A DNA stretch of 64,000 bases from Podarcis gaigeae (taxonomy: Eukaryota): NCBI GenBank assembly GCA_964106915.2, contig OZ066917.1. One strand, 5' to 3'. A program made the translations under genes and the position numbers. Below, in pieces: positions 40,190-64,000 of the stretch. Under the pieces are notes generated by a model that worked only from the letters and a program-made list of their open reading frames with translations, was not told the origin of the DNA and searched no databases. Within the stretch, counting starts at the first letter, position 1; each line of letters opens with the position of its first letter.

Positions 40190-40348
40190 TCATTTTGTGT
40201 ATTGACGAATCCAGTCATAAAGTGTTGTGATCTTGGTGTAAACGCCAGGGCGATTCCGTCGAGCACATCCTTCACCCCAGCTGACAATGCCTGTAAGGTA
40301 CCATCTGTTTCCTCTTCCTAAACAGGCTAATGGACCCCCAGAGTCACC
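40190..40348 (-). CDS. TTSP exon 18 (catalytic Ser, stop)
   Basis: [52 protein letters not shown]; AATAAA on the - strand at 39748-39753. Confidence 0.95.
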
Positions 40349-43300
40349 CTAAAAGGAAGGACAGAAGCCTCACTTTTTGCTTCATTGCATAACTAATGCA
40401 TATTTGCAGTTAGGATTGTGATATGATACACACTTTCACATTTGTGCTGTTTTATCAATTCTTATACAGTCATTTCCAAAACCCATAAGTCACCATGTGT
40501 AATTGTGGTCTGACGATATATTGTCTATCAGGTTCACATGGTGTTAGATGATACTTGTTGCCTGATGGGTGTGACTGGTTAAATGAATGCTTGAACTCCT
40601 GTGATTAGTGTTGTTGTTAACACTGTTTGGCACAATGTGTCTGATTCCCAACTAACATACTACTGCAGTCTAGACAACATGCTTTTACAGGTACACGACT
40701 TGAGCCAGGATTGGGAAGAGAGTCACCATGAGGAAGCCTGCTTCCACATAGCCTTAGAGATCCAGGAGATTCAGTTAATATGTAGGTGTGTGTTGCATGT
40801 GCCTCAGATATTATTTTATTTTACTCCAACATCAAAGGCAGAAAGGAATGAGGTTGAGGTTGATATGGCTCAAGAAGGCATATGTCAGTACAAATTGGTA
40901 CTCATTTAGGATTCAAATGCAAGTATTCTTGAAATTAAAAGTTAAGAACATAATATTTAAAGAATCTTTAATGGACACGTCAGATAATTTTCTAGTCATG
41001 CTTGGAGTAGGCCCATTGAAATCAGTGGGACTTAAGTTAGTTGCTACTAACTTACTCCCATTGATATCATTGTGGTTACGTTTATTTAAAAAACTTCTAT
41101 CCTACCTAATTTTCAAAATAAACTCAGTGGGTCTACTCTGACTAAGTCTGGATCCAACCCAGAGATGTCTAATGTCTTTTTTTCTATGGGAATAAGAAAA
41201 CATTCCTGGAAAAAATAATTTTGAAAGGACTGATGTACAAATCAGTGTCACTTTTCACAATCATTTTCCACTTTACCTGACATGCGTCAATGCCACCATT
41301 AAGGTTCCCAGCACACAGCATCCGAGAAGTAATCAGATCGTCATAAAGCTTGTTGCAAACACTCTGATCAATTATTTTCACCTTCGCTTCTTGCAGTGTT
41401 TTTGCAAGTTCACCTACAACAACAGAAACATTGTATGGGTTAAGCATGATGGTTCTGATTGCAAAGTGAGAGGTAAAAAAAATAATAATCAAGATCTTCC
41501 TTAGATCTTTTAACTTTTCCTTGCCTATATGTTCCCAGAATAAAAAACGATTGGCACAGCACATGGTGAATTAAACTGAATAAAGGTTAATCTAATTGAA
41601 CATTTCCAAATCTAAGCATATTACCTTCCTAGTGGCTTCTTAAGTTTACTATCCTCTAAGAATAAACTAAAATTAAAGAGTTCCATCATTTGTCACTGAG
41701 GATATGTATTTATAATTGCCACAAGTGATATCCAATTGAGCTAGGCCATATACCTTAAGTTATTTATTTATTACATTCATTATACTCCACTTTTTAGCCA
41801 AGGATGGATCCCAAAGTGGCTCACATTTACAATCCACAAAAAGGTACAATATATTAGGATGCCTGGCATTTGCAATAAACATATCCAGAAATGAACATAC
41901 TATTTTCTTTTACGGCTCCCCAGCCAGTTACATAGCAGACAGTTCCATAAATTAATAGTCTACGACTGCTTGGTAAACATATGGGCTGTACCAGCTCATT
42001 GAAGAATACTGGTGACTCCATTTCCAACAGGGCAATGTCATAGTCTGAGATATATTGGTCATAATGTGGGTGAACAATGATCCTTTTGATCGATCTCATC
42101 GCTACGTGATTATCATTATTTCTGTTAATGACCTTTATACCCATATATGCTGTCCAGCCAGATGCTATAGAGTATCTGAAAAACAACAAAACGTGCAGTT
42201 TTCCATGTGCTCTTCTTATACGGGTCTCATTCATTTGAATGGGAATTGCATAATTTATTCATTTTATTATTTGTATTTATAGCTCAGCCTTCACCAAATT
42301 GCTCAGAAGGCAGGTTACTAAAAAAACCAAAATAAACCACCGCCCAAAAACTCCACATAAAACACATACAAGTTCTAATAAAATAAAACAACAAAACTAA
42401 GAAAATAACCAAAGCGGGCAACAGCACAGTTCACCAATCCAGCAGGAAGGAAGACTCCATTCAGCCCAAGGCCTAGATCTTGATTAATCATTTTTTTTAA
42501 AAAAAAACCTCAAGCTATCACAAAATACACTTTTGGGGAGGGGTCATTCCACAACCTAGGTCATAGAAGGCAAATCTTGTGGTTACTGTACGCCCCTAGT
42601 GATTATTTATCAGTAATGAATGCTTCACATTATATAATGCATACCTTATCGAATCGGAGTCCTGAAAGCAATGGGCAGCAGATACCAGCCAACTATTTGA
42701 AATAATAGATGCACCACATATATGGCCATATGTTTTTAGCTGCAAGCTGGCTTGCCAAGGCCACTTTCCATACTTTGCATCTTCACCACCAACAATTCTG
42801 GGTCTTTTTACCTGACTCCTTCCACATGCTAATAAAAAAATGAAATACATATGGAGGTTATGTATGTAAAAACAAAATACTCTACCAGTCATGCACTGCA
42901 ATCCTGAACAGACTTTCTAGGGCACAAGTCCCATTTAGTTTAACTAGATTTTCTTTGGTAAATCTGCTTAGATTTGCATTGTAGAAGTGCAATTGCACAT
43001 ACATGGACAAAAGACCTACTAAGTATATTGGGACATCTCTCTTTCATGTAAAGGGTTTGTGACAGGGTTAGGTTCCTGAAGCCTTCCAGATGTTGACTTC
43101 TTACTTCTGTCACTTCCAGCCAGCATGGTCAATGGTCAAGGATGATGGGCAGATGGCATTGAGGCAGCATGACTGATTTTGACACACTACGCCCAGAGCC
43201 TAGGGGGTGTCACAGGGCAGCACAAGTAGGATGTAGTGAATTGAGCAGAATGGAAGATGAGAGGCAGGGAGAACTAAATATTCACCTCACACAGGGCACC

Positions 43301-46300
43301 GCTTGAAGTCTGCCCCTGCAATGGGAGTGGTTGTTCAGCAACATCTGGAAACCCAGAAGTTATCCACTCCTTATTGAGGAACTAGCTTTATAAATTTTTA
43401 TTTTTTTATTTATACCCTGCCCATCTGGCTGGGTTTCCCCAGCCACCCTGGGTGGCTCCCAACAGAGGACTAAAAACAGAATAAAACTTTAAACATTAAA
43501 AACTTCCATAATCAGGGCTGCCTTCAGATGTCTTTGAAAAGTCTGATAGTTGTTTATTTCCTTGACATCTGATGGGAGGGCGTTCTGCAGGGTGGGCACC
43601 ACTACTGAGAAGGCCCTGTGCGTGGTTCCCTATAACCTCACTTCTCGCAGGGAGGGAACCGTCAGAAGGCCCTCGGCACTGGACCTCAGTGTCCGGGCTG
43701 AATGAAGGGGGTGGAGATGCTCCTTCAGGTATACTGGGCCAAGGCCGTTTAGGGCTTTAATGGTCAGCACCAACACTTTGAATTGTGCTCGGAAACATAA
43801 TGGGGGCCAATGTAGGTCTTTAAGGATAAACCCTAATTCAGAGCCATGTGTGACTTGCAGTGGATGCAACGCTCTCACACTTTGCCGATTCTTACTTCAG
43901 CAGAGAAATCACACATGTCAACATATCCCTTTGAACACATAGAGCTACTCCTTCTAATTAAATTATGAGAAATGTTATGACAACTCCTAGAGCTCCTTTC
44001 CCCCATCAATGCAGGGGATTTCTCCTGTGCCTTCAATGTATCATTGGAGCAAGGCACTGGTTTTTTATTTCAGATAAAGTTTTCCTGTTCAATTGATTTG
44101 AAATAAGGTTATTTGGTCGTGGTAGCTGGGGCTGATGGGAAATGCAGTCCAAGAACATTTCAAAGGCACTATGTTGGCTATCTCTGATGTAAGGCCTCTG
44201 TGAATGATGAGAACCTCAGTATAATGGTCAGGGAGGAGATGTAGGGAAGTACACACGTTGTGGTAGAGCTTGTGGCCTGTAGAAGAGATTGATAGCAACT
44301 GGAGTGAGACATGGTAATGGCACCCTTTCTTCTTCTCAATCTCCCTAAACTACAACCCTTAGGAATTACTATATGAGAACCTCTTCTCCTTACTGTATTG
44401 GACAGATTTTGTGCTCCAGTGTAGGCCTGGGCCATCAAGACAGAGCATAGAGCAAAGAGATAATATAGCAGCTATGTCACTGATGAAAAAGTACCATATT
44501 CCTAGATAATGGGTACCTAGGAGCTCCATGTGCACATTAGTGTGTACATAGTCCTGATCTGAAATACACAGACACATTTCAGCTCACTTCATTGTTCACT
44601 CATTATTGACTTACCACAGTTCATTTCATCAGATCCATCTGCACAGTCTCTTATGCCATCACACTCTGGGTTTTGCTTTATTGGACACTTTCCATTTAGA
44701 CATTTATATGCATGCTGTGAGCAGCTTCTATAGGCTGAAAGAATACAGTGACAGATGAGAAACATAGCAATGATGCATTTCATGGTGCTGCCTCATAGGT
44801 CATGCAGCATAATTAAAGCAATGCATTTTCTAAAAATACATAGAATCACAAAGCTGTAGAGTTGGAAGGGACAATGACAGTCATCTAGTCCAACTCCCTG
44901 CAATGCTGGAATCTTTTGCCCAACGTGGAACTGAAACGCACATTCCTGAGATTAAGAGTCTCAGGCTCTACTGACTGAGCTAAATGTATAATTTCATAGG
45001 TGTCTTGGCAATATGTTCGATAACCTAGACCAGGGCTATCCAACATGGTGCTCTCCAGATGTTGTTGAAACTTCAACTTCCATTATCTATTAGCATTGGC
45101 CATGCTGTCTGAGGTTGTCTGAAGTTGCATCTGTTTTCTATCCTTGACTTCCACATGCCAAAAGTTCCATTTTGCCACTGGAAAAGCTGTTTAATGTAAA
45201 GATATTCAGATCTGATTCTGAAACCTTGTGCCCAGTAAACAACGCACACTTCTGTGTGCGCACAGTCTGTTGTGTGGCTAAAGTGCACAGGGGAGCTAGT
45301 TTTCTTTTTAAAAAGGTTTTGGCAAGAATTTTCTGCTTGGCAATTGTTTGCCCTTACGTAAACTTTTTGAATAAGTAAAACAACAGTTCACAATGTTTAA
45401 ACTTTTCCCCATTTGCAGAACACGTTCTTCAGTATTCTTGAGATACTACTCTCAGGCAGTCACTATTTCATTGCTTTCACTGCCATGTCTAAAAGATGTT
45501 TTGTGCTTATCCTGGACAAAATGTCTTATTGTGGAGATTTAAAAAACAGACTGTTAAAAAACATCCTTGCAACATCTTTGGGTACTCATGCATTTAATAA
45601 TTTTAAAAGTATGAATATTAGTCTTCAGAAAAAGCACACAAATGGGGTTTTTTCCTGTGTGGTAGGAACAAATATAATGTATGTTTTAGACATATTGCAT
45701 TAAACAAGCATAAGATAAATCAGAAAGAGCTGTCAGGAAGGGGCAGTGCACTGCACCTGGCATCCCATCAGTGGCATTCTTAGTGCTTACTGAGAGAGGG
45801 AGGGATGCAGCAGCAGAGAGGTCAACATTGTGCAGATGCACCAGTGAGAGCACTGGATTAGCTCTGCTAGTGTGCCTGAGCTACCAACCTCACCCCTGCC
45901 TTGCTCCTCCCCCTCTTTCTCCCATAAACACTAGTGAGACCACTGATGGTAGACCAGATGGGTGGCAGCATCCCTCCCTGCCAACTGTTCCTGCAACAAA
46001 TAAGAGCATGGTGCATATCAACATAACCATGAGAAAATGATGCAAGAACGCCCTACATTGCTGGCATTTTCGTAATTCCCAGTCTAAAATTTGTTTATGT
46101 TGTTCTTACCACAATTGTCTTCCTCCTCATCACTCTCACTTTCACAGCTGCCATCTCCTTTACAAGGCCTGGAATGGTGTTTACACTTCCCATTACCACA
46201 ATTAGACTTCACGGGATTGCAGCCTAGGGAAGAATTTTATCATCAAGACTGTGGTGTTTCATTCAACAGCAGATGTCCCCAGAAAGCACATATCCACTGC

Positions 46301-49300
46301 CGTTGCTTCTTTTAAGATGAACCCTGGGAATTGTTGACAACCTTAGAATTCAGTTAGAAAGACCTAGTCCCACCTGAAACAAGTCCAAATCCTGGACTGA
46401 AAACTAGGAAGTACTATTAAACCAATATGAAATGAGAATATGTCCCAATAAAACATGGTCTTCTCATGCAGTAGACCAGAGAAATTTACTTTCTTTAGCA
46501 TCACTACTGCTTAGTTTGCTATTCAAAGTTCTTTATATGAAATGAATCTCAATTCTTGACTGAGCTGTTAAAACACTTCACAAAATGAAAGGTATTTTTA
46601 ATAAACGAATGGGTTAGGGAAGGGTCTGATGACCTGTAATGATATTCAAGCTCTATATGCTTAATGGCTCTGATTTTATTTATTTATGTCATAAAATTTA
46701 TAAACTGTTTGATTGTTTAAAACTAACCAACCAATCAACCCTGCAAGCTGTTTTCTTTTCAGCCAATACCTTACCAAGCTATATTTACAATATTCTAATT
46801 AGCTCACGATGAACTCACCACAGTTTACCTCATCACTTCCATCGGCGCAGTCTTTCCATCCATCACATCTACTGTTTAAAGAGACACATGTTTTGTCGGA
46901 ACATTTAAATTGCCTAGGACAAGCTGAAAGAATTGAAAAATATCAGACTACCATAGGTAATCATGATGACAATGAGTCACAGAGTAAAATTCTGTACTGT
47001 TATGACAGCTGAGTAGGATAAGATTTGTCCCAAACCCGCTTTGGTGACAGGGGAAAACATATTAGAATAGCTATAACCTTGTACCAGAGGACCAAAGTCA
47101 AATGGCAATGGACATACCCCAGCAGAGGCTAGAAGTTCTGGCTAATTTTGCAGCCAATAGCAGCACTCTACCAGAAGCATATAAGCACTAACAAGGTAAC
47201 TGCAATCTTACAGTATCTCAGAGTCTGAGACAAGGGATCGTGTGGTGCCTGTTGCTGGACTACAGTTCCTATAAGCCCAGCTAACATCACCAATGGTCAG
47301 GGATGGTGACAGATTTCATGAATCCCATTTCCACTGCTTCAACTAGATACAGGGCATACACATTGATAGATCCAGGTAGGAATCCCATATCTCCAAGTGA
47401 GACTACTCTGACACCATCCATCTCTTAACCCAAGCAGAAGACAGCAAGGATTTTAGCTACAAAGTGTCCCACCTTTGTCTCTGCACCTAAAATATGTTCC
47501 AGCTAGACAATGTTTGGTGGCATGACCACTGACATGGAGTCACAGAAAGGTTATGAATGCTGGTGAGGTCCCTAGTTCAGACACCTTTGTTGGTGAATGC
47601 AGAGCACTCCACTGAACTTATTGGTATGGCTGGCCAAGCATTTATTATTTATCCTTCCCTGAAGGGTATGTTAGCACAAGGAACATAACAGTCATTGGAG
47701 ACAGAGTTTCAGTGCAATTTCTTATATGGGATGGATGACTAATGACTACACTATATTTTCAAACAGGTTTGTAACCCAATACAGACTTTCGGTCTGCCAC
47801 TAGGAGAGAGGGAGGTTGGTTGGGAATGGAATAGTATCTTGTTCATAACAGCCCTTTTTAAGTCATTCATCACACTGCCCATGTCTTTCTACAGTCAACC
47901 AAACAGTCCTCCATCACCCACAGAGATACCAACCCATTGAGATCCAGTGTGGTATACTGGCAGGGCAAAAAGCCCAGAATAAAATTTAAGATATTAACTG
48001 ATGCAAAAGACAGAGGGGGGTTTGCCCTGCTGGACTTAAAACTGTACTATGAATCGGCAGCTTTCTGCTGGTTGAAAGACTGGCTACTTCTTGAGAATAC
48101 AGACATTTTGGATTTGGAAGGTTTTGATAACAGATTTGGTTGGCATGCATATATATGGTATGACAAGGTAAAAACTCATAAAGGATTTAAAAACCATATT
48201 GTCAGGAAAGCACTATACAATGTTTGGATTCGATATAAGGACTTGTTGGAAAATAAAACCCCTAGGTGGCTGTCACCAATGGAAGCAAAGGAGATGAAAA
48301 AGCTTAATATGGAATCGAAATGGCCAAAATACTGTGAAACTTTAGAGCAAGAGAGTGGAACAATCAAATTGCAGAGTTATGAAAAAATGAAGTCTAAAGT
48401 ACGAGATTGGCTTCATTACCATCAAATAATGGAAGTGTTCAAACAAGACAGGAAAATTGGCTTCCAGGTGGAGAGATCAAAACTAGAAACAGAACTGTTA
48501 GAACCCAATACTAAGAATTTGTCAAGAATGTATAACCTGCTGTTGAAATGGAATACACTAGATGAGACAGTTAAATCAGCTATGATTAAGTGGGCACAAG
48601 ACATTGGTCATGATATTATGTTTGCTGACTGGGAACAGTTATGGACCACCGGTATAAAATTTACGGCATGTAATGCCTTAAGAGAAAATATTATGAAAAT
48701 GATTTACAGGTGGTACATGACCCCAGTCAAGCTTGCAAAAATTTATCATTTGCCCAATAATAAATGTTGGAAATGTAATGAGACTGAAGGTACCTTCTAC
48801 CACCTCTGGTGGACTTGCCCGAGGATTAAGGCCTTCTGGGAAATGATTTATAACGAAATTAAGAAGGTACTTAAATGTACTTTTCATAAGAAACCAGAGG
48901 CATTTCTCCTGGGCATAGTCGGCCAAGTGGTGTCTAAGAAGGATAGGATGTTTTTTATGTATGCCACCACAGCAGCAAGGATTCTTTTAGCAAAGTATTG
49001 GAAGACACAAGAACTACCCACATTGGAAGAATGGCAGACGAAGGTGATTGACTATATGGGACTTGCGGAGATGACCGGCAGAATCCGTGACCAAGAAAAA
49101 GAGACGGTGGAAGAAGATTGGAAGAAATTTAAAGTATATCTTAAGAACTGTTGTAAAATTAAAGAGTGCTAAAATGTCAAGGGAAAAGAAAATATTGAAT
49201 TATAGCTGTAATTGATTAAGTATGAGAAGAAGCTAAAAAAGAAAATAAGTAATTAGACAATTGGTGTGAGGAGTTGTTGAAAAAATCTCAAAACAGGGAT

Positions 49301-52300: not shown

Positions 52301-54184
52301 ATAAGCCACACTTTAACTTTTCATGGTCAGAATTTGGGGGAAGGGAAAAGTGAGGCTTATATTCAGGCCAATATGGTACTTTTAAGCTTTCTGCCTTGCT
52401 TACCAGGCTCTGGGAAAATCTTACGTGGGCTCGCAAAATGTAGTGATATCTCAGATGGCCCAGAGATATCCCACAAGGGCCTCCTGAGCCTGTGTGAGAT
52501 CTTCCCTGAGCCTGGTAAGAAAATCTAAGAGCTTTTAAGCTCTTCACCTTGCGTGTGTTTCATTTGTTCAGTTCCAGCTGGCCAGCTGCCAAGAGCGTAA
52601 AGCTGTGATCGCACACGTTACACGTGTGCAAGATGTGAGTTGACTGCAATAGAGAGTGCAGTAGGATCATGAATGCTACCCTAGTCTCTTCGAGGAAGAT
52701 TAGGGCACAATGTTATAACAATCCAAAATCCATATTAGGCTGATATAATGCCTATTTCTCCTCACCACACAAACGATAATCACATGTATGTAAGATCTGT
52801 CATTTCATTTAAAATTATTTCCTTCTGTTTTTCTGGTCTCCTTGTTTTAGAAGAGCTTTCTTTTTTGGGGGGGGGAATCAAGTTTTTAAAAGATTTTCAT
52901 TAAAAAGTTCTCTGTTACTTCTAAGAGTACATACTCTAATAATCCAGTGGCAGTCAATATTCGGTGGATAGTAACTTGGGTAGTATGGAGAAATTACAGT
53001 CCCATTCCAAGAGATGTATCGACCACCACATACTAAGGAGAAAATAAAACAAAACATTATTATTCTGAAGAACTGCTCATCTCTTGTTATGGAAAGCATG
53101 GGAAAAGCTCTTCTTGAAGTGAATGGAAGGTTTTTTTTCATATGCAAGTAGCTGGTCCGAGGTGGTGGAGCAAAAAAGAATTACTATAGGTGGGTAGTAT
53201 TAAATTCACCACCACCACCAAATATAGATCAGGTGTTCTGCGTGGGCAACCTGATTTTAAAAAACCTGCATCTAAGTGCACAGTTGTGGAGCTAATAGAT
53301 CATCTGGCTTTTCCCTCAGGAAAGAAAGAATGGCATAGAAATAACTCTCTCTACTCTGCTAGGCCAAAGGGGTTCTTCCTTTCTCATTGTGCAAGGGAAA
53401 ACACATACAAAGTACGATGATTCACTTATTTCCCCCTATGCATCATACAACAAATGACATTTGGAACCCCCTTCACTGACTTTCAGAAGCTGGTTGTTTT
53501 GCTGCTCAGAGAATATGCTTTCACAGTGATGAAATGTGGAGGCAGCTCAGTTTGCCACCATCCGCTTTGAGAAAAATTTGCAACAGATTTGTATACGTTT
53601 GTAATAAGAAGGGTGACAGAATTAGTATTCCCCCCAAAGCATCTTTCATCACTTGGCTCACTCTTCTAAATGCCATTGTGAACTTGAGAGAGCTACTGTC
53701 CCAAGTCACTTGAATCACGAGTCATTCAATACAGCCAAAAAGTGGATAGTTTCATGCAACCCATGTCAGTCTTAGAGAACCCTAATATTATTATAGAGTC
53801 AGGTCAAAATAATCCTTGAATCCATGTCTAACCCCATTTTAAATCCACATAAATATTTCAAATATAACACAACTACATGTGAGCCATCAAAAGTTGTTCA
53901 CAAACAATGCTTGGCATCTGGCAACTACATACCAATTTTAGGAACTGCTTGAAAATATGCATTCAATATATTGCTCTCTTTTCTTCGGTCCAATGAGAAT
54001 GTGACCAACATGACATTACTCGATGAAGTTAAACGTATAACTGGGGACGTCCAGGCCCCGGACGACCCACACCATCTGAAATACATCCAGGCAGATTACA
54101 AAGCTGATTTGGACAGCAGAAAATCTCTTCCACTACTATACGTACCACCCAAGGGGCCTTGGGACACAGGGTGCTCTATCCCAT

Positions 54185-54234
<50 letters not shown>

Positions 54235-57200
54235 CTGCTTTGTGTCTATGGAGCAAACTTTTAATTTTTATTTATATAATTTTTATTACATTTTCTAATT
54301 TACATTTCAAAATATTCATTTAAACAACCTTAAACCAATGACTTCCCTTCTTTTTCCACAGTTCATTTTGCATACCTTAAAGGTAAAGGGGCCCCTGACC
54401 ATTAGGTCCAGTCGTGGCCGACTCTGGGGTTGCGGTGCTCATCTTGCTTTATTGGCTGAGGGAGCCTGCGTACACCTTTTGGGTCATGTGGCCCGCATGA
54501 CTAAGCTGCTTCTGGCGAACCAGAGCAGCGCACGGAAACGCCGTTTACCTTCCTGCCGGAGCGGTACCTATTTATCTACTTGCACTTTGACGTGCTTTCG
54601 AACTGCTAGGTTGGCAGGAGCAGGGACCGAGCAACAGGAGCTCACCCCATTGCGGGGATTCGAACTGTGACCTTCTGATCAGCAGCTCCTAGGCTCTGTG
54701 GTTTAACCCACAGCGCCACCCGCGTCTCTTCGCATACCTTACATCCCTGCATATTTTACATAAACTAAACCATTCTGTAATCCATTGCTACATCCATCAA
54801 AACTTATTTACACTGTTGGATTTATCTTAAAGCCACCAGCATTTTTAAATGAACACAGTTTTCATCCATGTATACTGTAAACATTTTCCGGTCTTCTTTA
54901 AACATACATTCTTCTTGTTCTCTATATGTTAAAACTGCAAGCTGTGTGTATTCCATCAGTTTAAATTGGCATTCTTCTTTGGTTGGGACCTCACTCATTT
55001 TCCATTTTGAGGCTAGCATACATAAATAGTCTTTTTTGACACCTGGAAATTTATCCCCAACAAAAAGGACTCTGTTTTGTTTTTGTTTTTTGAAAGGCAC
55101 TTTTAAACATTTCCCCCCAGTTCATTATATATCATTTCCCAATACTCTTTTACAAGTCCACCACATATGATAAAATGTACCCTCAACCTCATTAGATCTC
55201 CAGCATGGAGCAAACTTTTAAAATGCTCTTACCTTGTAATGATCTTATTTTGCAGAGGGAGAAGGAAGTCATATGCGGATAGCCTGTGAGATGCACAGCT
55301 CCCAGGAGTCACGCTATGCAAGGGAACAACCACTAGTCTCACAACGTGGTCCGATGGAACTCGCAGCCTCCACTGATAAAAAGGTCTCTTAGGATTCATC
55401 AGTGTTAAGGTCCTATTATTACCAGGCTTTGCATAGAGGTCAAAGGCCACTGGTAGACAAAACCAAAATAAATCAGTGGCTGAAAAGCAGAAAAGCAGAG
55501 AAATGAATCCAGACCCTGTCGGCCCAGATCCCAGGAACCAGTTGTCTACGCCACAAAAGGCAGGCTTGTCCATCACATCAGACAAGGACTGAATACATTA
55601 TGAGACAGCTCTGTGCTATGCTCTCACCCCATGAAGTTGTCCTCCTTTGGGACAAGGCGGAGGCACAAAGGAGATGAAAAAGGATCTACACTGGGCACCT
55701 GATTAGTGGCTAGAAGACTTGAATTTCTCTGTACCAAGCCAGCACCTTTCACCAGATAATTGAATGCAAAGCAGCTCTAAGTGCATCAACTATTGGAAAA
55801 AGCAGGTGAAACACATCAGCTTAAGTAGAGCACACAGTTGGAGACAATTCCTCTTTCTTACAGCACTTTCTTAAGCACAATTGTTTAGAAATCTTACTGA
55901 GGTCTATGGGGCTTACTCCCGACTACAGCTGTATCCTTAAGGTAAATACAGAAAACATCATTTGTATAATATCTAACCCTTCCGGCATTAAAAAGATCAT
56001 TGTGAGCTTCACCATACCCATTGTGCGGATGAGGAATCATGACTGACTTGTCCACAGCTGTTGAGGCGAACAGTTTAATTGTTAGTCCACTAAGTCAAGC
56101 CAGCTCAAAATTTCTCAGATCCATAAACCATGTCAGCATATCGGTCTTCTTCTTTTTAGTTTATCCAGAGGTTAAGACCATATTGTGGCCCAGCCAGCAG
56201 GACTAAACAATTACGGTTCTTCTCACATATCATCCCATTAATTACAGTCATATTGTAGGGACAAAACAGCTCAGAACTGATCTGCTGTTATCATGCCATA
56301 ATCTTTGAGCAGCATGCTTCAAGGCACAGAAGCAATTCCCAAAAGAGAGGGAGATTTTTGTTCTTATCTTTGGTGAAGGGCTGGAGCAGAGATCAAGGCT
56401 TCTGGCCCCTTCCAGAGATCCTACTCAGATGACATCTGTGGGGGTAGGAATACATGGATGGAGGGAACAGTACTGGTCTTGCTGCCCTCATTTCCCCCAT
56501 CTGCTTGTTCACCTAAAGCTGTGGACAAAGCCTATGTGTGCTCTGTTTACTACTTCAAGATACAGGAGCTGGCCAGCAAGTGCACTCCTGATAATCTACT
56601 GCTGCCGCCGCCACCACCACTCTCTTCCACATGTCTCTAGCAAGTTCTTATACAGCCTTTATAAAATAAGCAAATAACTCCTCATACCTCACATTTTGAG
56701 AGTGCAACATTGATTTAAATTGGCCAATTATGCAACTGACAAGTGGGGCCTGTAAGAAAAATGCTGCAGTGTGGAGCTCTCCAGCCAGCCATGTCCTCTT
56801 CTAAGATAGTCCATTCCATTCCCCTTTTCCTCAGTTTTCAGTCACAAGTACACATAACTGTCAATCAGCTCAGTGCTCATTTTGGGGTTCAGTTCTCCTT
56901 ATGTCCCTTCTCTGCCTGTTGTATGATTATTATCCCTCCCTCTTATGCATGGATAGTGCTATTTTGGCAACATGGGGATCCATACACAGACTTCAGTTTG
57001 CCACTGTTATAACACCATCTACTGAGAAACTTTGAATGGATTACAGTCCCAGATTTAGAAGATTAGGAGAAGGCCCTTTGGAAATGCTTAAATAGTCTGG
57101 ATTCATTTTTATAAGCTGAAAATAGGGATGCAGAAGAAATTTGATTTTGTTTGCATTTTAACAAGGAACTACATAATTTGCATTTCTCAAACCGCAGGGT

Positions 57201-60200
57201 GAACCAAAACACAACTATCCTTCAACATTCTCCCTTTTCAAAATTTTGCAGTCCAGTTCTCCATCTGAACTCTTTCTCTCTCTGGCATCTGTTAGGGAAG
57301 CATCTATGCAAAATATCTTTATTAGTGAACATAACATACAAAAAAGGGTTTTGTAAGGGAAAATTGCTTGCATAAATATGTATATTAGTCAACACTGGAT
57401 GCAAAAATCTGTTTATTAGGATAAATTCATGTCATGCTAAAGGGCTGGTGAATTTTCATGAAGATTTCGCAAAGATTTTTTAAAGTGGCAGATTGCTGCA
57501 GAAATGTGGAGAGCTGAAATGAATAGGTCTGTCCATCTTTGCAGACAATAGTTGCAACTGACTCAGAGTGCAATACTTTTTTTTCTGCAGAAGCAGCCTT
57601 GGAATGAAAATGAGTTGCATAGGAGTGCAAAGGTGGCCTTGAGCAACCCTGTTCATTTCCATGACTCTTCAGCTGGAGATGTTCCTCTTATTCACTGAAT
57701 CCTTTAGGTTCAACTTAAGAGCAAGCGCTGATGAAACAAAAGAAAGTTGTGCTGGAGCAACATTTGAAATGGTGTGCCATTGGACAATGGGGACAAACAT
57801 AGCTCTTACCTGCTTTCCATGTCACATCATAGTCCATAGAATCTGAAACTAAAAATGATGAAGAATCCTCAAAATTAGTGGCATATGCATTCCTATGAAT
57901 TATTGGAACTTCTAAAGAATATAAAAAATAATGTTACCAAAGAGCTCCATGGTAATAACATCAAAATCCTCCTCCAAAGAATATACTTCAGCTGTGCTGT
58001 TTTCAGTTGCAGGTGCCCGTTTACTGAGTATTTGCTTTTGCTTCGTCGAAGACAGATTTTGAATAGAAAGAACCATATCTTGAGGGGCCCAAAATGTACT
58101 CCAGTAATAAGCTCGAAGGCCACTCTTTCCTTCACTGGAGGAAGATGACAAAATAAGATTGAAGAAGAGCATTGGCTTGGAGAGGGACGTCTTGTTCCTC
58201 TCTGCCTGTGCTCAAGGGTATCAGGGCAGATTTGCAGCACATGGGGAGAAGTCTGTGAGTTAAATGGGGTCACACATTCAAACTACAAGCACCAATCAAT
58301 CCATGCTCACAGAGACTTTTTTTTCTTTTTTCCTCCCTAGGGAGATTCCTGCTCACATGAAGATGGTTGTTTACTATTCAGATCCTGCACTTCACCATAA
58401 ACTAAGGGTGAAATGCAACCACTAACAATGTGGCTATGCACATCTGAAAGGAGCTGGTGAACTGGGAAGTCCTTGGTTCACATTTAACCTCAGTTGCACA
58501 ATATTTATGTGGCATTATACATGACTGTAGACCAGTTCCTGTCTATTCTGAATCTAGCGTGCTCCCACCATTGGTTTGGGAAGCTGTATAAACACCATTT
58601 TAGCCACAATCCTTAGGTATCGTGCCATTTCTCATGAAATACTATGCTCTGATATCCATCTCCCCCCTCAAACAAACAATCAAAAACAGCTTTGATCCAA
58701 ACAGAGAAAAAGAGCAACCTAGCTTCATTTTAATCTGGTAATGTGTACCCAGCCCAAGTCACTGTCTCTCAGCCTCATTCATCTCATGAGGCATAATGCT
58801 CATATTGAGGTGGGAAATGTCTTTTGAATGTGTTTAAAATGTATATTGTGTATGCAGCAAAGGCAGAAATGAGCTGCATTGAACTAAGTTTCATTGCTTT
58901 TGTATATGTTCTTTGACTTGGGCAGCAAATAGTCTTAGACCAGTGCTAACCATCCACTGACCTTCACATTCACTTCCCCTGCTTAGACTATTTCAAAAAG
59001 GCTCATGATTCATCTGAGATGGAATGGGAAGTTTATTTAGAATTCCAGCCAAAGTCTAATCTGAACTGGAATAAGACTAAATGCCTAATGAGATCCTCTA
59101 CTTAATATTATTATTTTCTGATTTTTGAAAACATGAATAGAAAAGACAACAAATGCCTACAGTCTGAAAAGGGGTTTTTGAAATTCTGGTACTTACCTAA
59201 AAGCAGTAATAACAGATGTCAAGTAATAATTCCCTAAGGCAGAAGATCCATACAATTCTGGAAACTGAGAGTTAAATGATTAGAAAACTACATATAAAGA
59301 ACAAGAAAAGGTCTGTAAAATATACAGTTTTTTAAAAGTGTTCTGAGTAACAAAAACATTTTCTTGCCATTGTTTTATGTCTAGCACAAATAAGTAGGTA
59401 GCCAGCACTGGTCGATTCATTTTTACAAGGCAGCATGATACTGATTCTTCATGAAATAGTAGTTATTGAATGACAAAAATCAGTATTGATTTAGATTATT
59501 TAAGATCTCTGTCATTTCTGGCTTCTAATCAGGTCATGGTCCACTCATGCAACCCATGCACAAAGCAGCTTTGAGGTACCTGGTGAATTCAGTTGGGAAA
59601 TGCAGGCTAACAGAGAGATGCTTTGTATTTTCAAGCCTTCTGTTAGCACGGAGCTAGAAAAGTGTATTGATCTCGCAAATAGAGTAAACTTGGGAGAGAA
59701 GTGCAAGAAAGCAAGTATTGTTGTGCTGGAAGAGGGAATTTGAAAAGAGGATTGATTTAAATATAAACTAATTGTCCAAAAATCTCCACAAAGAAATGCA
59801 CTAAGGCGGCAATCATATACAAGCTTACTAGGGGCTAAGTTGTATTTAACTCAGTGGGGACTATTTCTGAGTAGGCAGAGGATATATATGAAATATCTAC
59901 TGTGCAAAGCCAAAGAAGACACAACTCTGCTTACAGGAAATGGACCGGAGAGTGTGTTTTTCTAATTCTAGAAAGCTTAAGATAGTTCAGTTCCTAAAGC
60001 ATAACGTCAAAGTGGCACCCTTGTTCAACAGCAAAAATACAAATTGACCACTTTTTGGGTGGGTGTGAAAAGTGCTGCCCATACCAGGTTGTCTCGGCAT
60101 GCTTAGTGGGAAGACTGACATTGGTAATGGTCTTCAATTTTGATCAAGCCACCACAATCCTCCCTTTAAGGCAACTCAAAAAAAGATAGGTGCATGTCCC

Positions 60201-61034
60201 TTAACCGTGCCTCAGCAGGTCTAGTTTCATCAGCGGCATATCCCAAGTACAAAACCTATCAAATGAAATTTGAACCAAAATGTAGTCCTTTATATTTTCC
60301 ATAGGCAAACTCACACAATTCTGGACAGCTTCAGCTTGCAATATAAACGTATGCGATTTGGGGTGCATTAGGTCACTTGTGTAGGTCAAGTTAGGAATTT
60401 CTAGACTTCCACCAATGTAGATGAAAGAGAATGCAGGAGCTGAAAAGAAGGGAGGGGAAATATTAGCAAAACAAAAACAGGTTAGTTCGTGTGGGGGGGG
60501 GGAGGTTGCTTAAAAAGGCATAACTTCTGTATTAATAGGAAGACCCTTCCTTTTAATACACAACATCAAATCAAAGTCAACTACAAAATTTTATTCAAAA
60601 AATACTATCAGATGATCTTCCGTATTCAAATGGAAATCCACTTTCACTGGATTCAATTGAAGACACAACTATTGGATGACTCTGACTTTTGTCAGTGCCT
60701 GCTCATAATATTCTCAAGTGATCAAGAAGGTGTATGTAGGACTTTCTTGCACACACTATGCAAATGCTTAACTTTGAAATGTTATTGATTTTTATCTGTA
60801 TGTTTTCTAACCATTTTTTTAAAAGGTTCAAGCTAAATTCAGACCCAAGGGGCAACACTTTTAAATTATTTGGCTTTGCAGTTAGTGTAGAATTAGCAAT
60901 ATTTGCAAACCATAGATCCTGAGTACAGAGTGTTCCCCCATTGCATCAACTTTTTGCATTAGTGGAAAGCAGATTTGTTAAAGAAAAGCCACTCAGAGTG
61001 GCTGGGGCAATCCAGTCAGATGGATGGGGCTACA

Positions 61035-61076
<42 letters not shown>

Positions 61077-61743
61077 TTCAGCTCATAGATTCCTTTTTGT
61101 TGTATTGGGACCACTATCTAATGAGTTTAGGACAAAAAGACAAAAAACACAAGATTCTCATAGTGTGCCAAAACTAGTTGGTTATGAATATTTGTCATAA
61201 ACACGATACATCATTGGCAACCCGGAACTAAATAAAAACCCATTAAAAATAGTTTTGACATCAACCTGCTTGAAAAGCAATGAGGGCAACCTTTACATGC
61301 TTATAGAAATTAAAAGCTTGCAATAGTGACACTTACATAACGTATAGTACAGCACCAGCAGAATCACAGTGACAGTCAAGGAAATCACAGGTAACGTTTG
61401 TAAAAGACATCTTTTCCAGAAATGAAAATGCACTTTTTGGCCAAAAGAATGCTTTCGACTCGCAATATCTTCTTGTGAAGCCTGGCTGTGATGAAAAGGC
61501 AGACCCTGTTCAAGAAGGAAGGAAGGAAGGAAGGAAGGAAGGAATCGGCAAGCAAATCGAGGAAAATGATTCTGCCTTTGCTCAGCTGACAAGCGAATTA
61601 ATCGTTGCATTATTCATGAGCAATTTACAAGTGTGTTAGGAAACCAAATTGCAATTTCTTACCAGTCCAGAGAGAAACTGTGAGTCACAAGGAGTAGGTA
61701 TGCTGTATATAACAGAGAGGCGCCTGGATGGGAAAGACCTCAT
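40190..61743 (-). CDS. matriptase-subfamily type II transmembrane serine protease (ST14/TMPRSS7-like), 18 coding exons, 823 aa
   Basis: All 18 exons join in frame with GT-AG (2472 nt incl. stop): cytoplasmic, TM, SEA, CUB1, CUB2, 3 LDLa, activation site KRPR|IVGG, triad SAAHC / DYDIALL / GDSGG, S1 Asp (IDACQ). Confidence 0.93.
41277..41413 (-). CDS. TTSP exon 17
   Basis: [19 protein letters not shown]...[15 protein letters not shown]; phase 1 to 0. Confidence 0.95.
41901..42175 (-). CDS. TTSP exon 16 (catalytic Asp)
   Basis: [12 protein letters not shown]...DYDIALLEM...VQPICLP...CYVTGWG; phase 2 to 1. Confidence 0.95.
42645..42828 (-). CDS. TTSP exon 15 (activation site, catalytic His)
   Basis: [14 protein letters not shown]...WPWQASL...CGASII...SAAHCFQD; phase 1 to 2. 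Confidence 0.95.
43400..43820 (-). mobile_element. L2 LINE 3' fragment
   Basis: [37 protein letters not shown] plus shared 3' terminal motif. Confidence 0.8.
44615..44734 (-). CDS. TTSP exon 14 (LDLa-3)
   Basis: [36 protein letters not shown]; phase 1-1. Confidence 0.93.
44850..44985 (-). mobile_element. tRNA-Lys-derived SINE (Squam2-like)
   Basis: TAGCTCAGTCAGTAGAGCCTGAGACTCTTAATCTCAGG head with a degenerate T-arm, followed by a GAGTTGGACTAGATGAC LINE-like tail. Confidence 0.65.
46110..46223 (-). CDS. TTSP exon 13 (degenerate LDLa-2)
   Basis: [38 protein letters not shown]; six Cys, phase 1-1. Confidence 0.85.
46819..46923 (-). CDS. TTSP exon 12 (LDLa-1)
   Basis: [34 protein letters not shown]; phase 1-1. 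Confidence 0.93.
47957..49452 (+). mobile_element. young 5'-truncated L1 LINE
   Basis: Uninterrupted ORF2 C-terminus to 49172 with CCHC knuckle [14 protein letters not shown]; AATAAA at 49434, A-tail; exact 18-bp TSD GAGATCCAGTGTGGTATA (47939-47956 and 49453-49470). Confidence 0.92.
49817..49950 (-). CDS. TTSP exon 11 (CUB2 end)
   Basis: YCKPIGEG...[23 protein letters not shown]; phase 2 to 1. Confidence 0.9.
50730..50983. mobile_element. hAT-type MITE
   Basis: TAGGGTTGC ... GGCAACCCTA; TSD TATTGTGG / CATTGTGG. Confidence 0.7.
51141..51253 (-). CDS. TTSP exon 10 (CUB2 middle)
   Basis: [13 protein letters not shown]...[12 protein letters not shown]; phase 0 to 2. Confidence 0.9.
52029..52376. 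mobile_element. Tc1/mariner MITE with perfect TIRs
   Basis: CCATATTGGCCTGAATATAAGCC ... GGCTTATATTCAGGCCAATATGG (23 bp perfect) with TA flanks. Confidence 0.85.
52935..53032 (-). CDS. TTSP exon 9 (CUB2 start)
   Basis: [32 protein letters not shown]; phase 1 to 0. Confidence 0.93.
53933..54075 (-). CDS. TTSP exon 8 (CUB1 end)
   Basis: [29 protein letters not shown]...AYFQAVPKI; phase 2 to 1. Confidence 0.9.
54190..54230. repeat. (GA)n microsatellite
   Basis: Visible dinucleotide run. Confidence 0.95.
54265..55204 (-). mobile_element. 5'-truncated L1 with nested Sauria SINE
   Basis: Degraded ORF2 end ([20 protein letters not shown]); exact 17-bp TSD ATGGAGCAAACTTTTAA (54248-54264 and 55205-55221). 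Confidence 0.8.
54380..54731 (-). mobile_element. Sauria SINE (Squam1), full length
   Basis: Head ...GACGCGGGTGGCGCTGTGGGTTAAACC, B box and tail; TSD GCATACCTTA (54370-54379 and 54732-54741). Confidence 0.9.
55233..55449 (-). CDS. TTSP exon 7 (CUB1 start, divergent)
   Basis: [38 protein letters not shown]...[22 protein letters not shown]; phase 1 to 2. Confidence 0.88.
57810..57842 (-). CDS. TTSP exon 6 (33-nt linker)
   Basis: TTTCAG acceptor, CAG|GTAAGA donor; [11 protein letters not shown]; phase 1-1. Confidence 0.78.
57938..58134 (-). CDS. TTSP exon 5 (SEA C-part)
   Basis: [18 protein letters not shown]...ITMELF; 197 nt, phase 2 to 1. Confidence 0.85.
59197..59264 (-). CDS. TTSP exon 4 (SEA middle)
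   Basis: [22 protein letters not shown](S); 68 nt, phase 0 to 2. Confidence 0.87.
60315..60439 (-). CDS. TTSP exon 3 (SEA start)
   Basis: [41 protein letters not shown]; phase 1 to 0. Confidence 0.87.
60985..61076 (+). mobile_element. L2-derived 3' stub with (AAT)n tail
   Basis: AGCCACTCAGAGTGGCTGGGGCAATCCAGTCAGATGG motif then (AAT)n. Confidence 0.65.
61337..61505 (-). CDS. TTSP exon 2 (cytoplasmic + TM signal anchor)
   Basis: GLPFHHSQ...[28 protein letters not shown]; phase 0 to 1. Confidence 0.85.
61663..61743 (-). CDS. TTSP exon 1 (probable start)
   Basis: ATCATG start, [27 protein letters not shown]|GTAAGA, phase 0. Confidence 0.7.
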
Positions 61744-63262: not shown

Positions 63263-64000
63263 TATTAGGATCCATGTGGTCATACTTCTTCTCTGCCCTA
63301 TTTTAGAGACTCAGGATGGCTTAGATTCTATTCACACAAGACTGTAACTAGTCCAAAAAATGGCATAAATGAAACGCCAGCAAGTGGGACCTGCAACAAA
63401 ATGTCGGTGCCTTCTCCAGCCAGTAATTCTTTTCAAGCAGAGTACTCTACTTCCCATCTCCCCACTTTCTTTTCCAACTAACAATCTACATTATGTGGCT
63501 ATTGAATATGCTCCGTTATTGCTGGGCCATTTGTTTGATTTTTGCTGGCTGATGTTTTATGTTTTTTCCTTTTTTTGTGTATTTCTGTAGAACTTGGTAT
63601 TCCCCCAAGCATGCTTCTATTTTCTTCTTTCCCAGCAGCTCTTTGTTGTCTGCAAATCCTGGCAGCCCTCTGAGCTGAGGTCACTTTCTGCAGAAGTGAT
63701 ACTTCATTTATCCCGAACTGCAGCTCATCCACACTTCTGCTTGTCCTATGCCTAGAAAGCACATGTCGGTACTGTTTCCCACTTGCCCCATGCTTTCTAG
63801 GCACGGATCTGGGCTGTTTTGCCTTTGCCTCAACACTTTCCCTCAGAAAATCCACTCTTCAGTGCTAAATCATACTGAACATCAGTCCAGAGAAAACCTG
63901 ATTGATGTTCGCTCCAATTAAGAGATAAACAGCAGGTTTTCCATGGGGAATGTGGTCTGGGCAAGCAGAGGTGTGGATAAACCCTCAGAATAGTGACATG

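What the first reader, a model, noticed from the sequence alone, without database searches (positions are those of the whole stretch)
40190..61743. An intact matriptase-family protease at the TMPRSS7 locus that does not look like TMPRSS7: candidate additional matriptase
Seen: a complete 823-aa TM-SEA-CUB-CUB-LDLa x3-trypsin protein with intact triad and S1 Asp. Its protease domain (GHICGASII...[43 protein letters not shown]) matches my recollection of ST14 (GHICGASLI, RYSDPTQWTAFLG, GGVDSCQGD, SWGDGCAQRNKPGVYT) better than TMPRSS7 (SAYCGASVI, GKRDACKGD, SWGHGSGRPNFPGVYT). Yet it has three LDLa repeats, a divergent CUB1 (YDFLLPL) like TMPRSS7, and sits beside C3orf52, where human has TMPRSS7; true ST14 is on another chromosome in human. 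Inference: a separate paralog, probably tandem to TMPRSS7 (expected beyond the window end) and absent from human. The KRPR|IVGG site is compatible with matriptase-type self-activation.
Basis: partly seen in the sequence, partly recalled or inferred. Interest (0 to 1): 0.8.

Follow-up and report, generated by a model that had tools for sequence, protein, structure and literature searches.

The report
Extra matriptase-like protease beside TMPRSS7
This lizard window holds an intact, transcribed, strongly conserved membrane serine protease that is neither TMPRSS7 nor true matriptase (ST14) but a third, ancient relative sitting directly behind TMPRSS7, found from sharks to birds and not found in mammals.

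Summary
On the minus strand, 61743 to 40190, 18 GT-AG exons give an uninterrupted 825-aa type II membrane protease: TM, SEA, CUB, CUB, three LDLa repeats and a trypsin domain. The triad, S1 Asp and KRPR|IVGG site are intact.

The window is a Podarcis-like lizard. The protein is 819/825 identical to a Podarcis raffonei RefSeq model, with dN/dS 0.08. Spliced transcript contigs from four public runs confirm the last four introns.

- **Tandem TMPRSS7:** in P. raffonei a separate TMPRSS7 gene ends 4.3 kb upstream, just beyond the window. The same TMPRSS7 → this gene order occurs in ostrich, crocodile and stickleback.
- **Tree:** the gene falls in its own clade (99/96, sharks to birds). This clade is separate from TMPRSS7 (100/100) and from fish st14a/b (100/99).
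- **Not ST14:** fish st14a resembles human ST14 more than this lizard protein does.
- **Mammals:** none appears among the 120 best relatives.

Open points: deep branching among the paralogs is unresolved, and mammalian TMPRSS7, tetrapod ST14 and TMPRSS6 could not be fetched. Databases hold the gene only under misleading automatic names. I rate it a new member of a known kind, of moderate interest.

The parts
40190..61743 (-). Whole coding span of the ST14-like ('ST14L') type II transmembrane serine protease gene: 18 coding exons, 825 aa
   Evidence: all introns GT-AG, no internal stop, 819/825 identical to Podarcis raffonei XP_053242296.1 (P0278)
61663..61743 (-). Exon 1, ATG at 61743, aa 1-27 (cytoplasmic N-terminus)
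61337..61505 (-). Exon 2, aa 28-84, cytoplasmic tail and signal-anchor TM helix (about aa 61-81)
   Evidence: hydropathy maximum 2.47 over 19 residues at aa 61
60315..60439 (-). Exon 3, start of the SEA domain
   Evidence: Exon-level Pfam SEA 17.2 bits; SEA 42.8 bits on the proxy P0278
59197..59264 (-). Exon 4, SEA domain
57938..58134 (-). Exon 5, SEA domain
57810..57848 (-). Exon 6, short linker exon (39 nt)
55233..55449 (-). Exon 7, first half of CUB1 (holds YDFLLPL). An alternative in-frame acceptor at 55479 would add 10 aa
   Evidence: CUB fold by model and Foldseek
53933..54075 (-). Exon 8, second half of CUB1
52935..53032 (-). Exon 9, CUB2 part a
   Evidence: Exon-level Pfam CUB 25.7 bits
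51141..51253 (-). Exon 10, CUB2 part b
   Evidence: CUB 348-454 on the proxy
49817..49950 (-). Exon 11, CUB2 part c
46819..46923 (-). Exon 12, LDLa repeat 1
   Evidence: Pfam Ldl_recept_a 41.1 bits
46110..46223 (-). Exon 13, LDLa repeat 2 (degenerate acidic cluster)
   Evidence: Pfam 21.8 bits, below the 24.1 cut-off; six-Cys pattern present
44615..44734 (-). Exon 14, LDLa repeat 3
   Evidence: Pfam 39.1 bits; junction 44615|42828 seen in spliced contigs of 4 runs
42645..42828 (-). Exon 15, activation site KRPR|IVGG and catalytic His (AAHC)
   Evidence: Pfam Trypsin 58.8 bits; junction 42645|42175 in 4 runs
41901..42175 (-). Exon 16, catalytic Asp (DYDIAL) and Ser99. An internal alternative donor at 41992 gives a frame-shifted 708-aa isoform without the catalytic Ser
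   Evidence: Pfam Trypsin 57.8 bits; junctions 41901|41413 and 41992|41413 in contigs; isoform length
41277..41413 (-). Exon 17, S1 Asp (DACQ)
   Evidence: Pfam Trypsin 26.2 bits; junction 41277|40348 in contigs
40190..40348 (-). Exon 18, catalytic Ser (GDSGGP), SWGEGC, stop at 40192-40190
   Evidence: Pfam Trypsin 58.4 bits

Best explanation
The gene encodes a catalytically competent type II transmembrane serine protease of the matriptase subfamily. It belongs to an old, so far unnamed paralog group, here called ST14L, that lies head-to-tail directly downstream of TMPRSS7 and upstream of the C3orf52-like gene. The group is present in cartilaginous fish, ray-finned fish, coelacanth, lungfish, salamander, caecilians, reptiles and birds, so it arose before jawed vertebrates radiated. 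It has most likely been lost in mammals, where only TMPRSS7 is left at this locus. The following mechanism is inferred from the sequence. The protein is anchored by an N-terminal signal-anchor helix and displays a SEA-CUB-CUB-LDLa x3 stem. It is made as a zymogen and cut after Arg585 in K-R-P-R|IVGG. The protease domain then stays disulfide-linked to the stem and cleaves after Arg or Lys, as the S1 Asp189 implies. The dibasic P4-P3 activation motif, conserved through the clade, suits activation by itself or by another matriptase-like enzyme. Ser at position 99, where human matriptase has Phe, predicts a more open S2 pocket. An alternative donor inside exon 16 yields a 708-aa membrane form that lacks the catalytic Ser.
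For: **Shown**
- Intact 825-aa frame with GT-AG introns.
- Domain content by Pfam and by fold.
- Triad, S1 Asp and activation site present.
- 819/825 identity and dN/dS 0.08 against P. raffonei, while introns differ by 3-6%.
- Spliced contigs in four runs of three coded organisms match four predicted junctions, plus the alternative one.
- Own clade at 99/96 with a species-tree-like order, apart from TMPRSS7 (100/100), fish st14a/b (100/99) and a fish 'ST14/zmp' group (100/100).
- A TMPRSS7 gene directly upstream in lizard, ostrich, crocodile and stickleback.
- Fused public gene models in a rattlesnake, a goby and a mosquitofish join TMPRSS7-type and ST14L-type halves in that order.
- Bits to human ST14: sea bass st14a 326, carp ST14/zmp 303, stickleback ST14L 280, this protein 266, lizard TMPRSS7 234.
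- No mammal in the best 120 hits.

**Inferred**
- Zymogen activation, P1 specificity, the S2 pocket and the loss in mammals.
Against: - No mammalian TMPRSS7, tetrapod ST14 or TMPRSS6 sequence could be fetched, so these anchors are missing from the tree. The upstream gene's identity as TMPRSS7 rests on RefSeq names in eight sauropsids, on an Atlas cluster name and on my recollection of the human sequence.
- The order of branching among the paralog groups is unresolved. A tree with ST14L and TMPRSS7 as sisters is not rejected (AU p = 0.43).
- The TMPRSS7 gene was seen in a sister species, not in this genome, because it lies beyond the window.
- Absence from mammals rests on a ranked hit list, not on a genome search.
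- The laid runs are only guessed to be RNA, and their tissue is unknown.
- No activity data exist.
Confidence: 0.88

Rival explanations
1. It is simply the lizard ortholog of TMPRSS7 (matriptase-3), and it looks ST14-like only because mammalian TMPRSS7 evolved fast. This was my own starting guess.
For: It lies directly upstream of the C3orf52-like gene, where human has TMPRSS7 (my knowledge). It has three LDLa repeats. Some automatic names in birds and snakes say 'TMPRSS7-like'. One UniProt bird fragment named TMPRSS7 (P0380) falls in this clade.
Against: A separate gene that RefSeq names TMPRSS7 lies immediately upstream in the same orientation in lizard, ostrich and crocodile. The same species carry both genes on one contig, for example Pogona P0074/P0430 and Hemicordylus P0157/P0443. 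The two clades are separated with 99-100 support. Protease identity is only 44-48%.
Confidence: 0.02
2. It is the true ST14 (matriptase-1) ortholog of sauropsids, sitting at another chromosomal place than in mammals.
For: ST14 is the best solved-structure match. Most automatic names say 'suppressor of tumorigenicity 14 protein homolog' or '-like'. No sauropsid ST14 from another locus was fetched for comparison.
Against: Teleosts and the coelacanth carry a member of this clade as well as separate ST14-type genes. Teleost st14a (326 bits) and the carp ST14/zmp type (303) resemble human ST14 more than teleost ST14L (280) or this lizard protein (266) do, although a lizard is closer kin to human. 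The lizard protein has three LDLa repeats, not four.
Confidence: 0.05
3. It is a decaying or non-functional duplicate, transcribed but not a working protease.
For: An alternative isoform lacks the catalytic Ser. LDLa2 is degenerate. The SEA motif reads TSVIT where matriptase has GSVIA (the matriptase motif is from my knowledge).
Against: The frame is intact and all catalytic residues are present. dN/dS is 0.08. The protease domain is identical in two species whose introns differ by 3-6%. Protease-domain identity from shark to lizard is 64%. The canonical junctions are seen in transcripts.
Confidence: 0.04

Closest known systems
Matriptase / ST14 (human, PDB 1eaw and others; fish st14a, st14b)
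   Same: Type II membrane anchor, SEA, two CUB domains, LDLa repeats and a trypsin-like domain. It is the best solved match: 266 bits and 113/239 identical residues in the protease domain. Both share the DACQGDSGGP S1 region, SWGxGCA and a basic P4/P3 activation site.
   Different: It is a separate clade from fish st14a/b and less like human ST14 than fish st14a is. It has three LDLa repeats in lizards against four. It has Ser99, Tyr97 and Gln96 where human matriptase has Phe99, Phe97 and Asp96 (alignment). It sits at a different locus, next to TMPRSS7.
Matriptase-3 / TMPRSS7
   Same: Same domain order with three LDLa repeats, immediate tandem neighbour in the same orientation, and shared short motifs such as ITSRMLCAG and LTGIVSWG.
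   Different: Only 44-48% identical in the protease domain. There is no BLAST-detectable similarity in the SEA or CUB2 regions. The activation site is non-basic at P4/P3 in TMPRSS7 (ALHR or HVHR|I[IV]GG). TMPRSS7 has Tyr at position 99. The clades are separate.
Matriptase-2 / TMPRSS6 (PDB 9nrc)
   Same: Same architecture. It is the best structural match for the CUB1 model (TM 0.66) and the second-best solved family for the protease domain (231 bits).
   Different: It scores lower than ST14. No TMPRSS6 sequence was available for the tree.
RefSeq and UniProt automatic models: 'suppressor of tumorigenicity 14 protein homolog' or '-like' (e.g. Podarcis raffonei XP_053242296.1, Gallus, Chrysemys, Crocodylus, Callorhinchus) and some 'TMPRSS7-like'
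   Same: These are the orthologs of this gene, 99.3% identical in P. raffonei.
   Different: They carry borrowed names that hide the fact that they form a distinct paralog group. Some public models fuse the gene with TMPRSS7 (P0160, P0155, P0422).

Membership tests
Type II transmembrane serine proteases, matriptase subfamily | N-terminal signal-anchor helix with no signal peptide | tested here: met
   Hydropathy maximum 2.47 over 19 residues at aa 61-81, encoded in exon 2
Type II transmembrane serine proteases, matriptase subfamily | SEA domain after the membrane anchor | tested here: met
   Pfam PF01390 at 42.8 bits on the 99.3%-identical proxy; 17.2 bits on one exon alone
Type II transmembrane serine proteases, matriptase subfamily | Two CUB domains | tested here: met
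   CUB2: Pfam 52.4 bits. CUB1: not seen by Pfam, but the model matches the TMPRSS6 stem and classical CUB domains with E down to 1.5e-6. The model is of moderate confidence (pLDDT 67)
Type II transmembrane serine proteases, matriptase subfamily | Three or four LDL-receptor class A repeats | tested here: met
   Three single-exon repeats at 41.1, 21.8 and 39.1 bits; three six-Cys patterns
Type II transmembrane serine proteases, matriptase subfamily | C-terminal S1 protease domain with His-Asp-Ser triad, S1 Asp189 and an R|IVGG activation site | tested here: met
   Trypsin profile 1-220 at 230 bits; AAHC, DYDIAL, GDSGGP, DACQ and RIVGG present
Type II transmembrane serine proteases, matriptase subfamily | Proteolytic activity and zymogen conversion | not testable with these tools
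   Needs recombinant protein
TMPRSS7 (matriptase-3) orthologs | Groups with TMPRSS7 in a gene tree | tested here: not met
   Separate clades at 99/96 and 100/100. Mammalian TMPRSS7 itself could not be included
TMPRSS7 (matriptase-3) orthologs | Is the only matriptase-type gene at the locus | tested here: not met
   A second gene, named TMPRSS7 by RefSeq, lies directly upstream in four species
ST14 (matriptase-1) orthologs | Groups with ST14 and is more like human ST14 than more distant species' ST14 is | tested here: not met
   Clade separate from fish st14a/b; 266 bits against 326 for sea bass st14a
ST14 (matriptase-1) orthologs | Four LDLa repeats | tested here: not met
   Three in lizard, turtle, crocodile, lungfish and sharks; four in ray-finned members of the clade
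ST14 (matriptase-1) orthologs | Synteny with the mammalian ST14 locus | not tested
   The window shows TMPRSS7-locus neighbours instead (the C3orf52-like gene and CD200). No ST14-locus data were at hand
ST14L clade (unnamed; TMPRSS7-adjacent ST14-like genes of non-mammalian vertebrates) | Falls in the clade and lies head-to-tail downstream of TMPRSS7 | tested here: met
   For this genome the upstream gene lies beyond the window
ST14L clade (unnamed; TMPRSS7-adjacent ST14-like genes of non-mammalian vertebrates) | K-[KR]-x-[RK]|IVGGE activation motif and Ser99 | tested here: met
   16 of 16 clade members inspected carry the K-[KR]-x-[RK]|IVGG core. The residue after GG is E in 13 of 16 (K in Microcaecilia, S in Esox and Gasterosteus). 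Ser99 is present in all 15 members in which the DYD region could be read

The most novel reading that the evidence does not exclude
ST14L is a fifth, functionally distinct member of the vertebrate matriptase subfamily. On this reading it is an autonomous self-activating membrane protease with its own conserved dibasic activation motif and an open S2 pocket (Ser99). A conserved, catalytically dead membrane isoform acts as a built-in regulator. The TMPRSS7-ST14L pair would be the ancestral tandem from which the other matriptases derive. Mammals lost ST14L, so matriptase biology worked out in mouse and human lacks one player that fish, reptiles and birds still use.
Probability: 0.25. Interest if true: 0.65.

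Novelty: new member of a known kind. Interest (0 to 1): 0.5.

Why it matters
The matriptase subfamily is usually listed with four members: ST14, TMPRSS6, TMPRSS7 and TMPRSS9. A fifth, ancient and strongly constrained member that mammals lack has three consequences.

- **Model organisms:** it changes how chicken, lizard, zebrafish and other non-mammalian models should be read, because redundancy with ST14 is possible.
- **Annotation:** it explains a persistent muddle in which the same gene is called ST14, ST14-like, ST14 homolog or TMPRSS7-like, and is sometimes fused to TMPRSS7.
- **Evolution:** it gives a clean case of lineage-specific loss at a well-defined locus, between TMPRSS7 and C3orf52, that can be dated by looking for exon relics in monotremes and marsupials.

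It is not a new kind of system. Architecture and chemistry are those of a known family.

Tried and rejected
1. **My first reading** (a plain TMPRSS7 ortholog, 70% prior) was rejected.
2. **Equating the clade with zebrafish-type 'zmp:0000001114'** was rejected. Carp, tetra and goby proteins of that name fall in a different fish clade, the gar protein in a third, and only the pufferfish one in ST14L. The name is not a reliable guide.
3. **Fetching mammalian TMPRSS7, tetrapod ST14 and TMPRSS6** failed.
   - The exon search of representatives was swamped by multi-protease proteins.
   - The full-length search filled its 120 rows with clade members.
   - The two part or region searches were flooded by TMPRSS9.
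4. **Three look-ups of encoding contigs** failed because the proteins were not the longest isoforms.
5. **Literature:** I found no open paper on this paralog. The term search for the zmp number returned noise. The original matriptase-3 paper is not held.
6. **The C3orf52-like region:** tblastn of the ST14L stem against it gave nothing (best E 0.33). Pfam finds no family there.
7. **The Atlas look-alike search** gave only phylum-level taxa and could not settle presence in mammals.
8. **A tandem-duplication origin** (ST14L sister to TMPRSS7) is neither supported nor rejected.

Full report
**What is in the window**

I read open frames and splice signals. I then laid a near-identical RefSeq protein returned by the tools on the window (P0278, Podarcis raffonei XP_053242296.1, 825 aa). 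Together these define 18 coding exons, and every intron is GT-AG. With the exon-7 acceptor at 55449 the frame is 825 aa with no internal stop. An in-frame acceptor 30 nt upstream, at 55479, would give 835 aa.

Exon by exon, by reference, Pfam finds these domains:
- SEA.
- CUB.
- Three LDLa repeats at 41.1, 21.8 and 39.1 bits. The middle one is under the 24.1-bit cut-off but has all six cysteines.
- Four exons that tile the trypsin profile from position 1 to 220.

Pfam does not see CUB1. I modelled it from an alignment of 29 clade members. The model has pLDDT 67 and nine strands. It matches the TMPRSS6 ectodomain (TM 0.66) and then classical CUB domains. The signal anchor, RIVGG, AAHC, DYDIAL, DACQGDSGGP and SWGEGC are all present.

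**How the spliced model was handled**

The joined spliced protein was never typed or sent to any search or folding tool. Searches used single exons by reference, or P0278. P0278 differs from the window's product at 6 of 825 positions and is identical over the whole protease domain. Exons were joined only inside local scripts that read window.fa, to count frame, identity and substitutions. A human TMPRSS9 protein appeared in one hit list and was not used.

**Whose genome, and is the gene alive?**

Window DNA is 94-97% identical to Podarcis raffonei chromosome CM049753.1 over this locus, so the window comes from a closely related lacertid lizard. Between the two species the coding sequence has 20 synonymous and 6 non-synonymous differences, giving dN/dS 0.08.

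Contigs of four public runs, from three coded organisms and four studies, skip exactly the predicted introns. The junctions are 44615|42828, 42645|42175, 41901|41413 and 41277|40348, each with CT..AC ends on the plus strand. The runs' RNA label is a guess, but intron-less contigs can only come from spliced transcripts. Their tissue is unknown.

Two runs also show a junction from an internal donor at 41992 to exon 17. This shifts the frame and gives a 708-aa product ending shortly after the catalytic Asp, without the catalytic Ser. RefSeq lists 708-aa 'isoform X2' models in two Podarcis species. Similarly truncated isoforms exist in Pogona and two geckos.

**What it is not, and what lies beside it**

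I began with the view that this was simply the lizard TMPRSS7. The nearest proteins argue otherwise. More than a hundred 90%-identity clusters from squamates, turtles, crocodilians, birds, a salamander, caecilians, lungfish, coelacanth, sharks, rays, a chimaera and many ray-finned fish are its close kin. Almost all carry automatic names such as 'suppressor of tumorigenicity 14 protein homolog' or '-like', and a few are called 'TMPRSS7-like'. No mammal is among the best 120, although fish at 43-50% identity are.

The decisive result came from the P. raffonei locus. A second gene of 806 aa, with SEA, CUB, LDLa and trypsin domains, ends 4.3 kb upstream of the ATG in the same orientation. A Pfam-less gene of 219 aa starts about 8 kb downstream.
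- The upstream gene's four protease exons are only 39-53% identical to the window's protein.
- They are 75-98% identical to RefSeq 'transmembrane protease serine 7' of Salvator and Pogona, and 66-88% identical to that of Alligator.
- The same order, TMPRSS7 then this gene then a small Pfam-less gene, is seen in ostrich and saltwater crocodile.
- In stickleback a TMPRSS7-clade gene also sits directly upstream.
- Three public gene models are fusions of the two neighbours in that order: rattlesnake P0160, goby P0155 and mosquitofish P0422.

In the window itself the 2.3 kb upstream of the ATG holds no TMPRSS7 exon. This is as expected if the gene ends about 4.3 kb away, beyond position 64000.

**Tree**

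I built a careful ML tree of 55 protease domains, rooted on the TMPRSS9 domains.
- The window's proxy falls in a clade of 23 rows with 99/96 support. Its internal order follows the species tree: chondrichthyans, then ray-finned fish, then lungfish, coelacanth, amphibians and sauropsids.
- TMPRSS7 forms its own clade at 100/100. It holds nine sauropsid proteins plus the first halves of the two fish fusions.
- Fish st14a/b form another clade (100/99).
- A further fish group labelled 'ST14' or 'zmp:0000001114' is separate (100/100).
- A gar-specific pair is sister to the window's clade with weak support (83/83).

A quick tree of 72 rows gave the same groups. The order of branching among these groups is not resolved. 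Forcing this clade and TMPRSS7 together costs only 1.5 log-likelihood units (AU p = 0.43). So I cannot say whether the gene is an old tandem copy of TMPRSS7 or the genome-duplication twin of ST14. Either way it is older than jawed vertebrates' radiation, and it is not nested in TMPRSS7.

**Why it is not ST14 proper**

Against the solved human matriptase domain (1eaw_A), the scores are as follows.

| Protease domain | Bits to human ST14 |
|---|---|
| Sea bass st14a | 326 |
| Carp ST14/zmp type | 303 |
| Stickleback member of this clade | 280 |
| The window's own domain | 266 (113 of 239 identical) |
| Lizard TMPRSS7 | 234 |

An ortholog in a lizard should resemble the human protein more than a fish ortholog does. 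Here it resembles it less. The coelacanth pair points the same way, but weakly (285 against 276).

So is the conclusion that it is a separate paralog. The stem tells the same story:
- CUB2 aligns with the fish ST14 type at 38% identity and not at all with TMPRSS7.
- CUB1 is about equally far from both, at 24-29%.
- LDLa number is three in sharks, lobe-finned fish and tetrapods of this clade, and four in its ray-finned members.

**How it probably works**

The chemistry follows from established knowledge of S1 proteases. A zymogen is cut before IVGG. The new N-terminus forms the oxyanion hole. Asp189 sets Arg/Lys specificity. A cysteine before the cleavage site keeps the domain tied to the stem.

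Two features are particular to this clade.
- The activation site reads K-[KR]-x-[RK]|IVGG in all 16 members inspected, followed by E in 13 of them. It is KRPR in this lizard, and P1 is Lys in fishes. TMPRSS7 has non-basic P4 and P3 there.
- Position 99 is Ser in all 15 members in which that region could be read. Human matriptase has Phe (alignment) and TMPRSS7 has Tyr.

From the published matriptase structure and substrate profiling, as I know them, basic P4/P3 residues suit a matriptase-type enzyme, and Phe99 narrows S2. So self- or cross-activation and a wider P2 tolerance are reasonable inferences, including tolerance of the Pro in its own site. Both remain untested. The Ser-less 708-aa isoform could be a decoy or merely a by-product.

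**Neighbours**

The downstream gene starts near 34096 on the minus strand. It has a TM exon at 32439-32287 and no Pfam family. I take it for C3orf52 from its position and my memory of the human protein.

An Ig V-type exon at 13161-13664 best matches the OX-2/CD200 structure 4bfi_B. This fits the human order TMPRSS7, C3orf52 ... CD200, which I know from memory. BLAST-level search finds no similarity, which does not exclude a distant relationship.

**Novelty and limits**

Open literature searches found no description of this paralog. A 2026 paper that samples the family lists only TMPRSS6, 7, 9, ST14 and CORIN among the relatives (PMC13762310). Databases hold the gene, but under borrowed names.

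The missing pieces are:
- mammalian TMPRSS7, tetrapod ST14 and TMPRSS6 in the tree;
- a direct look at mammalian genomes;
- the stretch just beyond this window;
- any biochemical test.

**Verdict**

This is a new member of a known kind, of moderate interest (0.5).

Noticed in passing
window 41992 (minus strand, inside exon 16): An alternative donor joined to exon 17 in contigs of two runs gives a frame-shifted 708-aa isoform that keeps His and Asp but lacks the catalytic Ser. RefSeq lists 708-aa isoforms in two Podarcis species and truncated ones in Pogona, Euleptes and Sphaerodactylus, so the event may be conserved in squamates.
   Followed up: partly
window about 34096 down to about 26890, minus strand (TM exon 32439-32287; further exons in 30692-30327 and 27139-26891): A C3orf52-like type II TM gene of about 219 aa with no Pfam family. 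It has no BLAST-level similarity to the ST14L stem (best E 0.33). The name rests on position and recollection.
   Followed up: partly
window 12640-13664, minus strand: Two Ig-domain exons (V-set, then C2-set). The V exon best matches the solved OX-2/CD200 structure 4bfi_B (71 bits), so CD200 lies about 20 kb beyond the C3orf52-like gene.
   Followed up: partly
window 5719-8799, plus strand: An uninterrupted 1026-aa ORF that looks like a non-LTR (LINE) endonuclease and reverse transcriptase by eye. It was not run against any library.
   Followed up: no
window 43114-43893 (intron between exons 14 and 15): An interspersed repeat. Transcript contigs pile up to word depths of tens of thousands, with many variant letters and loose ends, as for a SINE-like family expressed from many loci.
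   Followed up: no
P0160 (Crotalus adamanteus 'TMPRSS7', 882 aa), P0155 (Knipowitschia, 1720 aa), P0422 (Gambusia, 1530 aa), P0511 (Anas, named 'Transgelin 3'): These public gene models are fusions or mislabels. The first three join a TMPRSS7-type part to an ST14L-type part. The duck TMPRSS7 carries the name of its other neighbour.
   Followed up: partly
P0014 (Atractosteus, 1138 aa), P0204 (Amia calva, 945 aa), P0265 (Lepisosteus 'zmp:0000001114'): Gar and bowfin models have a further protease domain fused behind the ST14L part. With the Lepisosteus protein it forms a tight group, weakly sister to ST14L (83/83). This suggests a third tandem paralog in holosteans.
   Followed up: partly
P0380 (Ficedula albicollis U3JV07, named 'Transmembrane serine protease 7'): This UniProt fragment named TMPRSS7 falls inside the ST14L clade next to zebra finch, which shows how the two neighbours are confused in name projection.
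   Followed up: yes
one search hit list: No frog appears among the best 120 relatives, although a salamander and two caecilians do. This may reflect a second loss in anurans or only the ranking.
   Followed up: no
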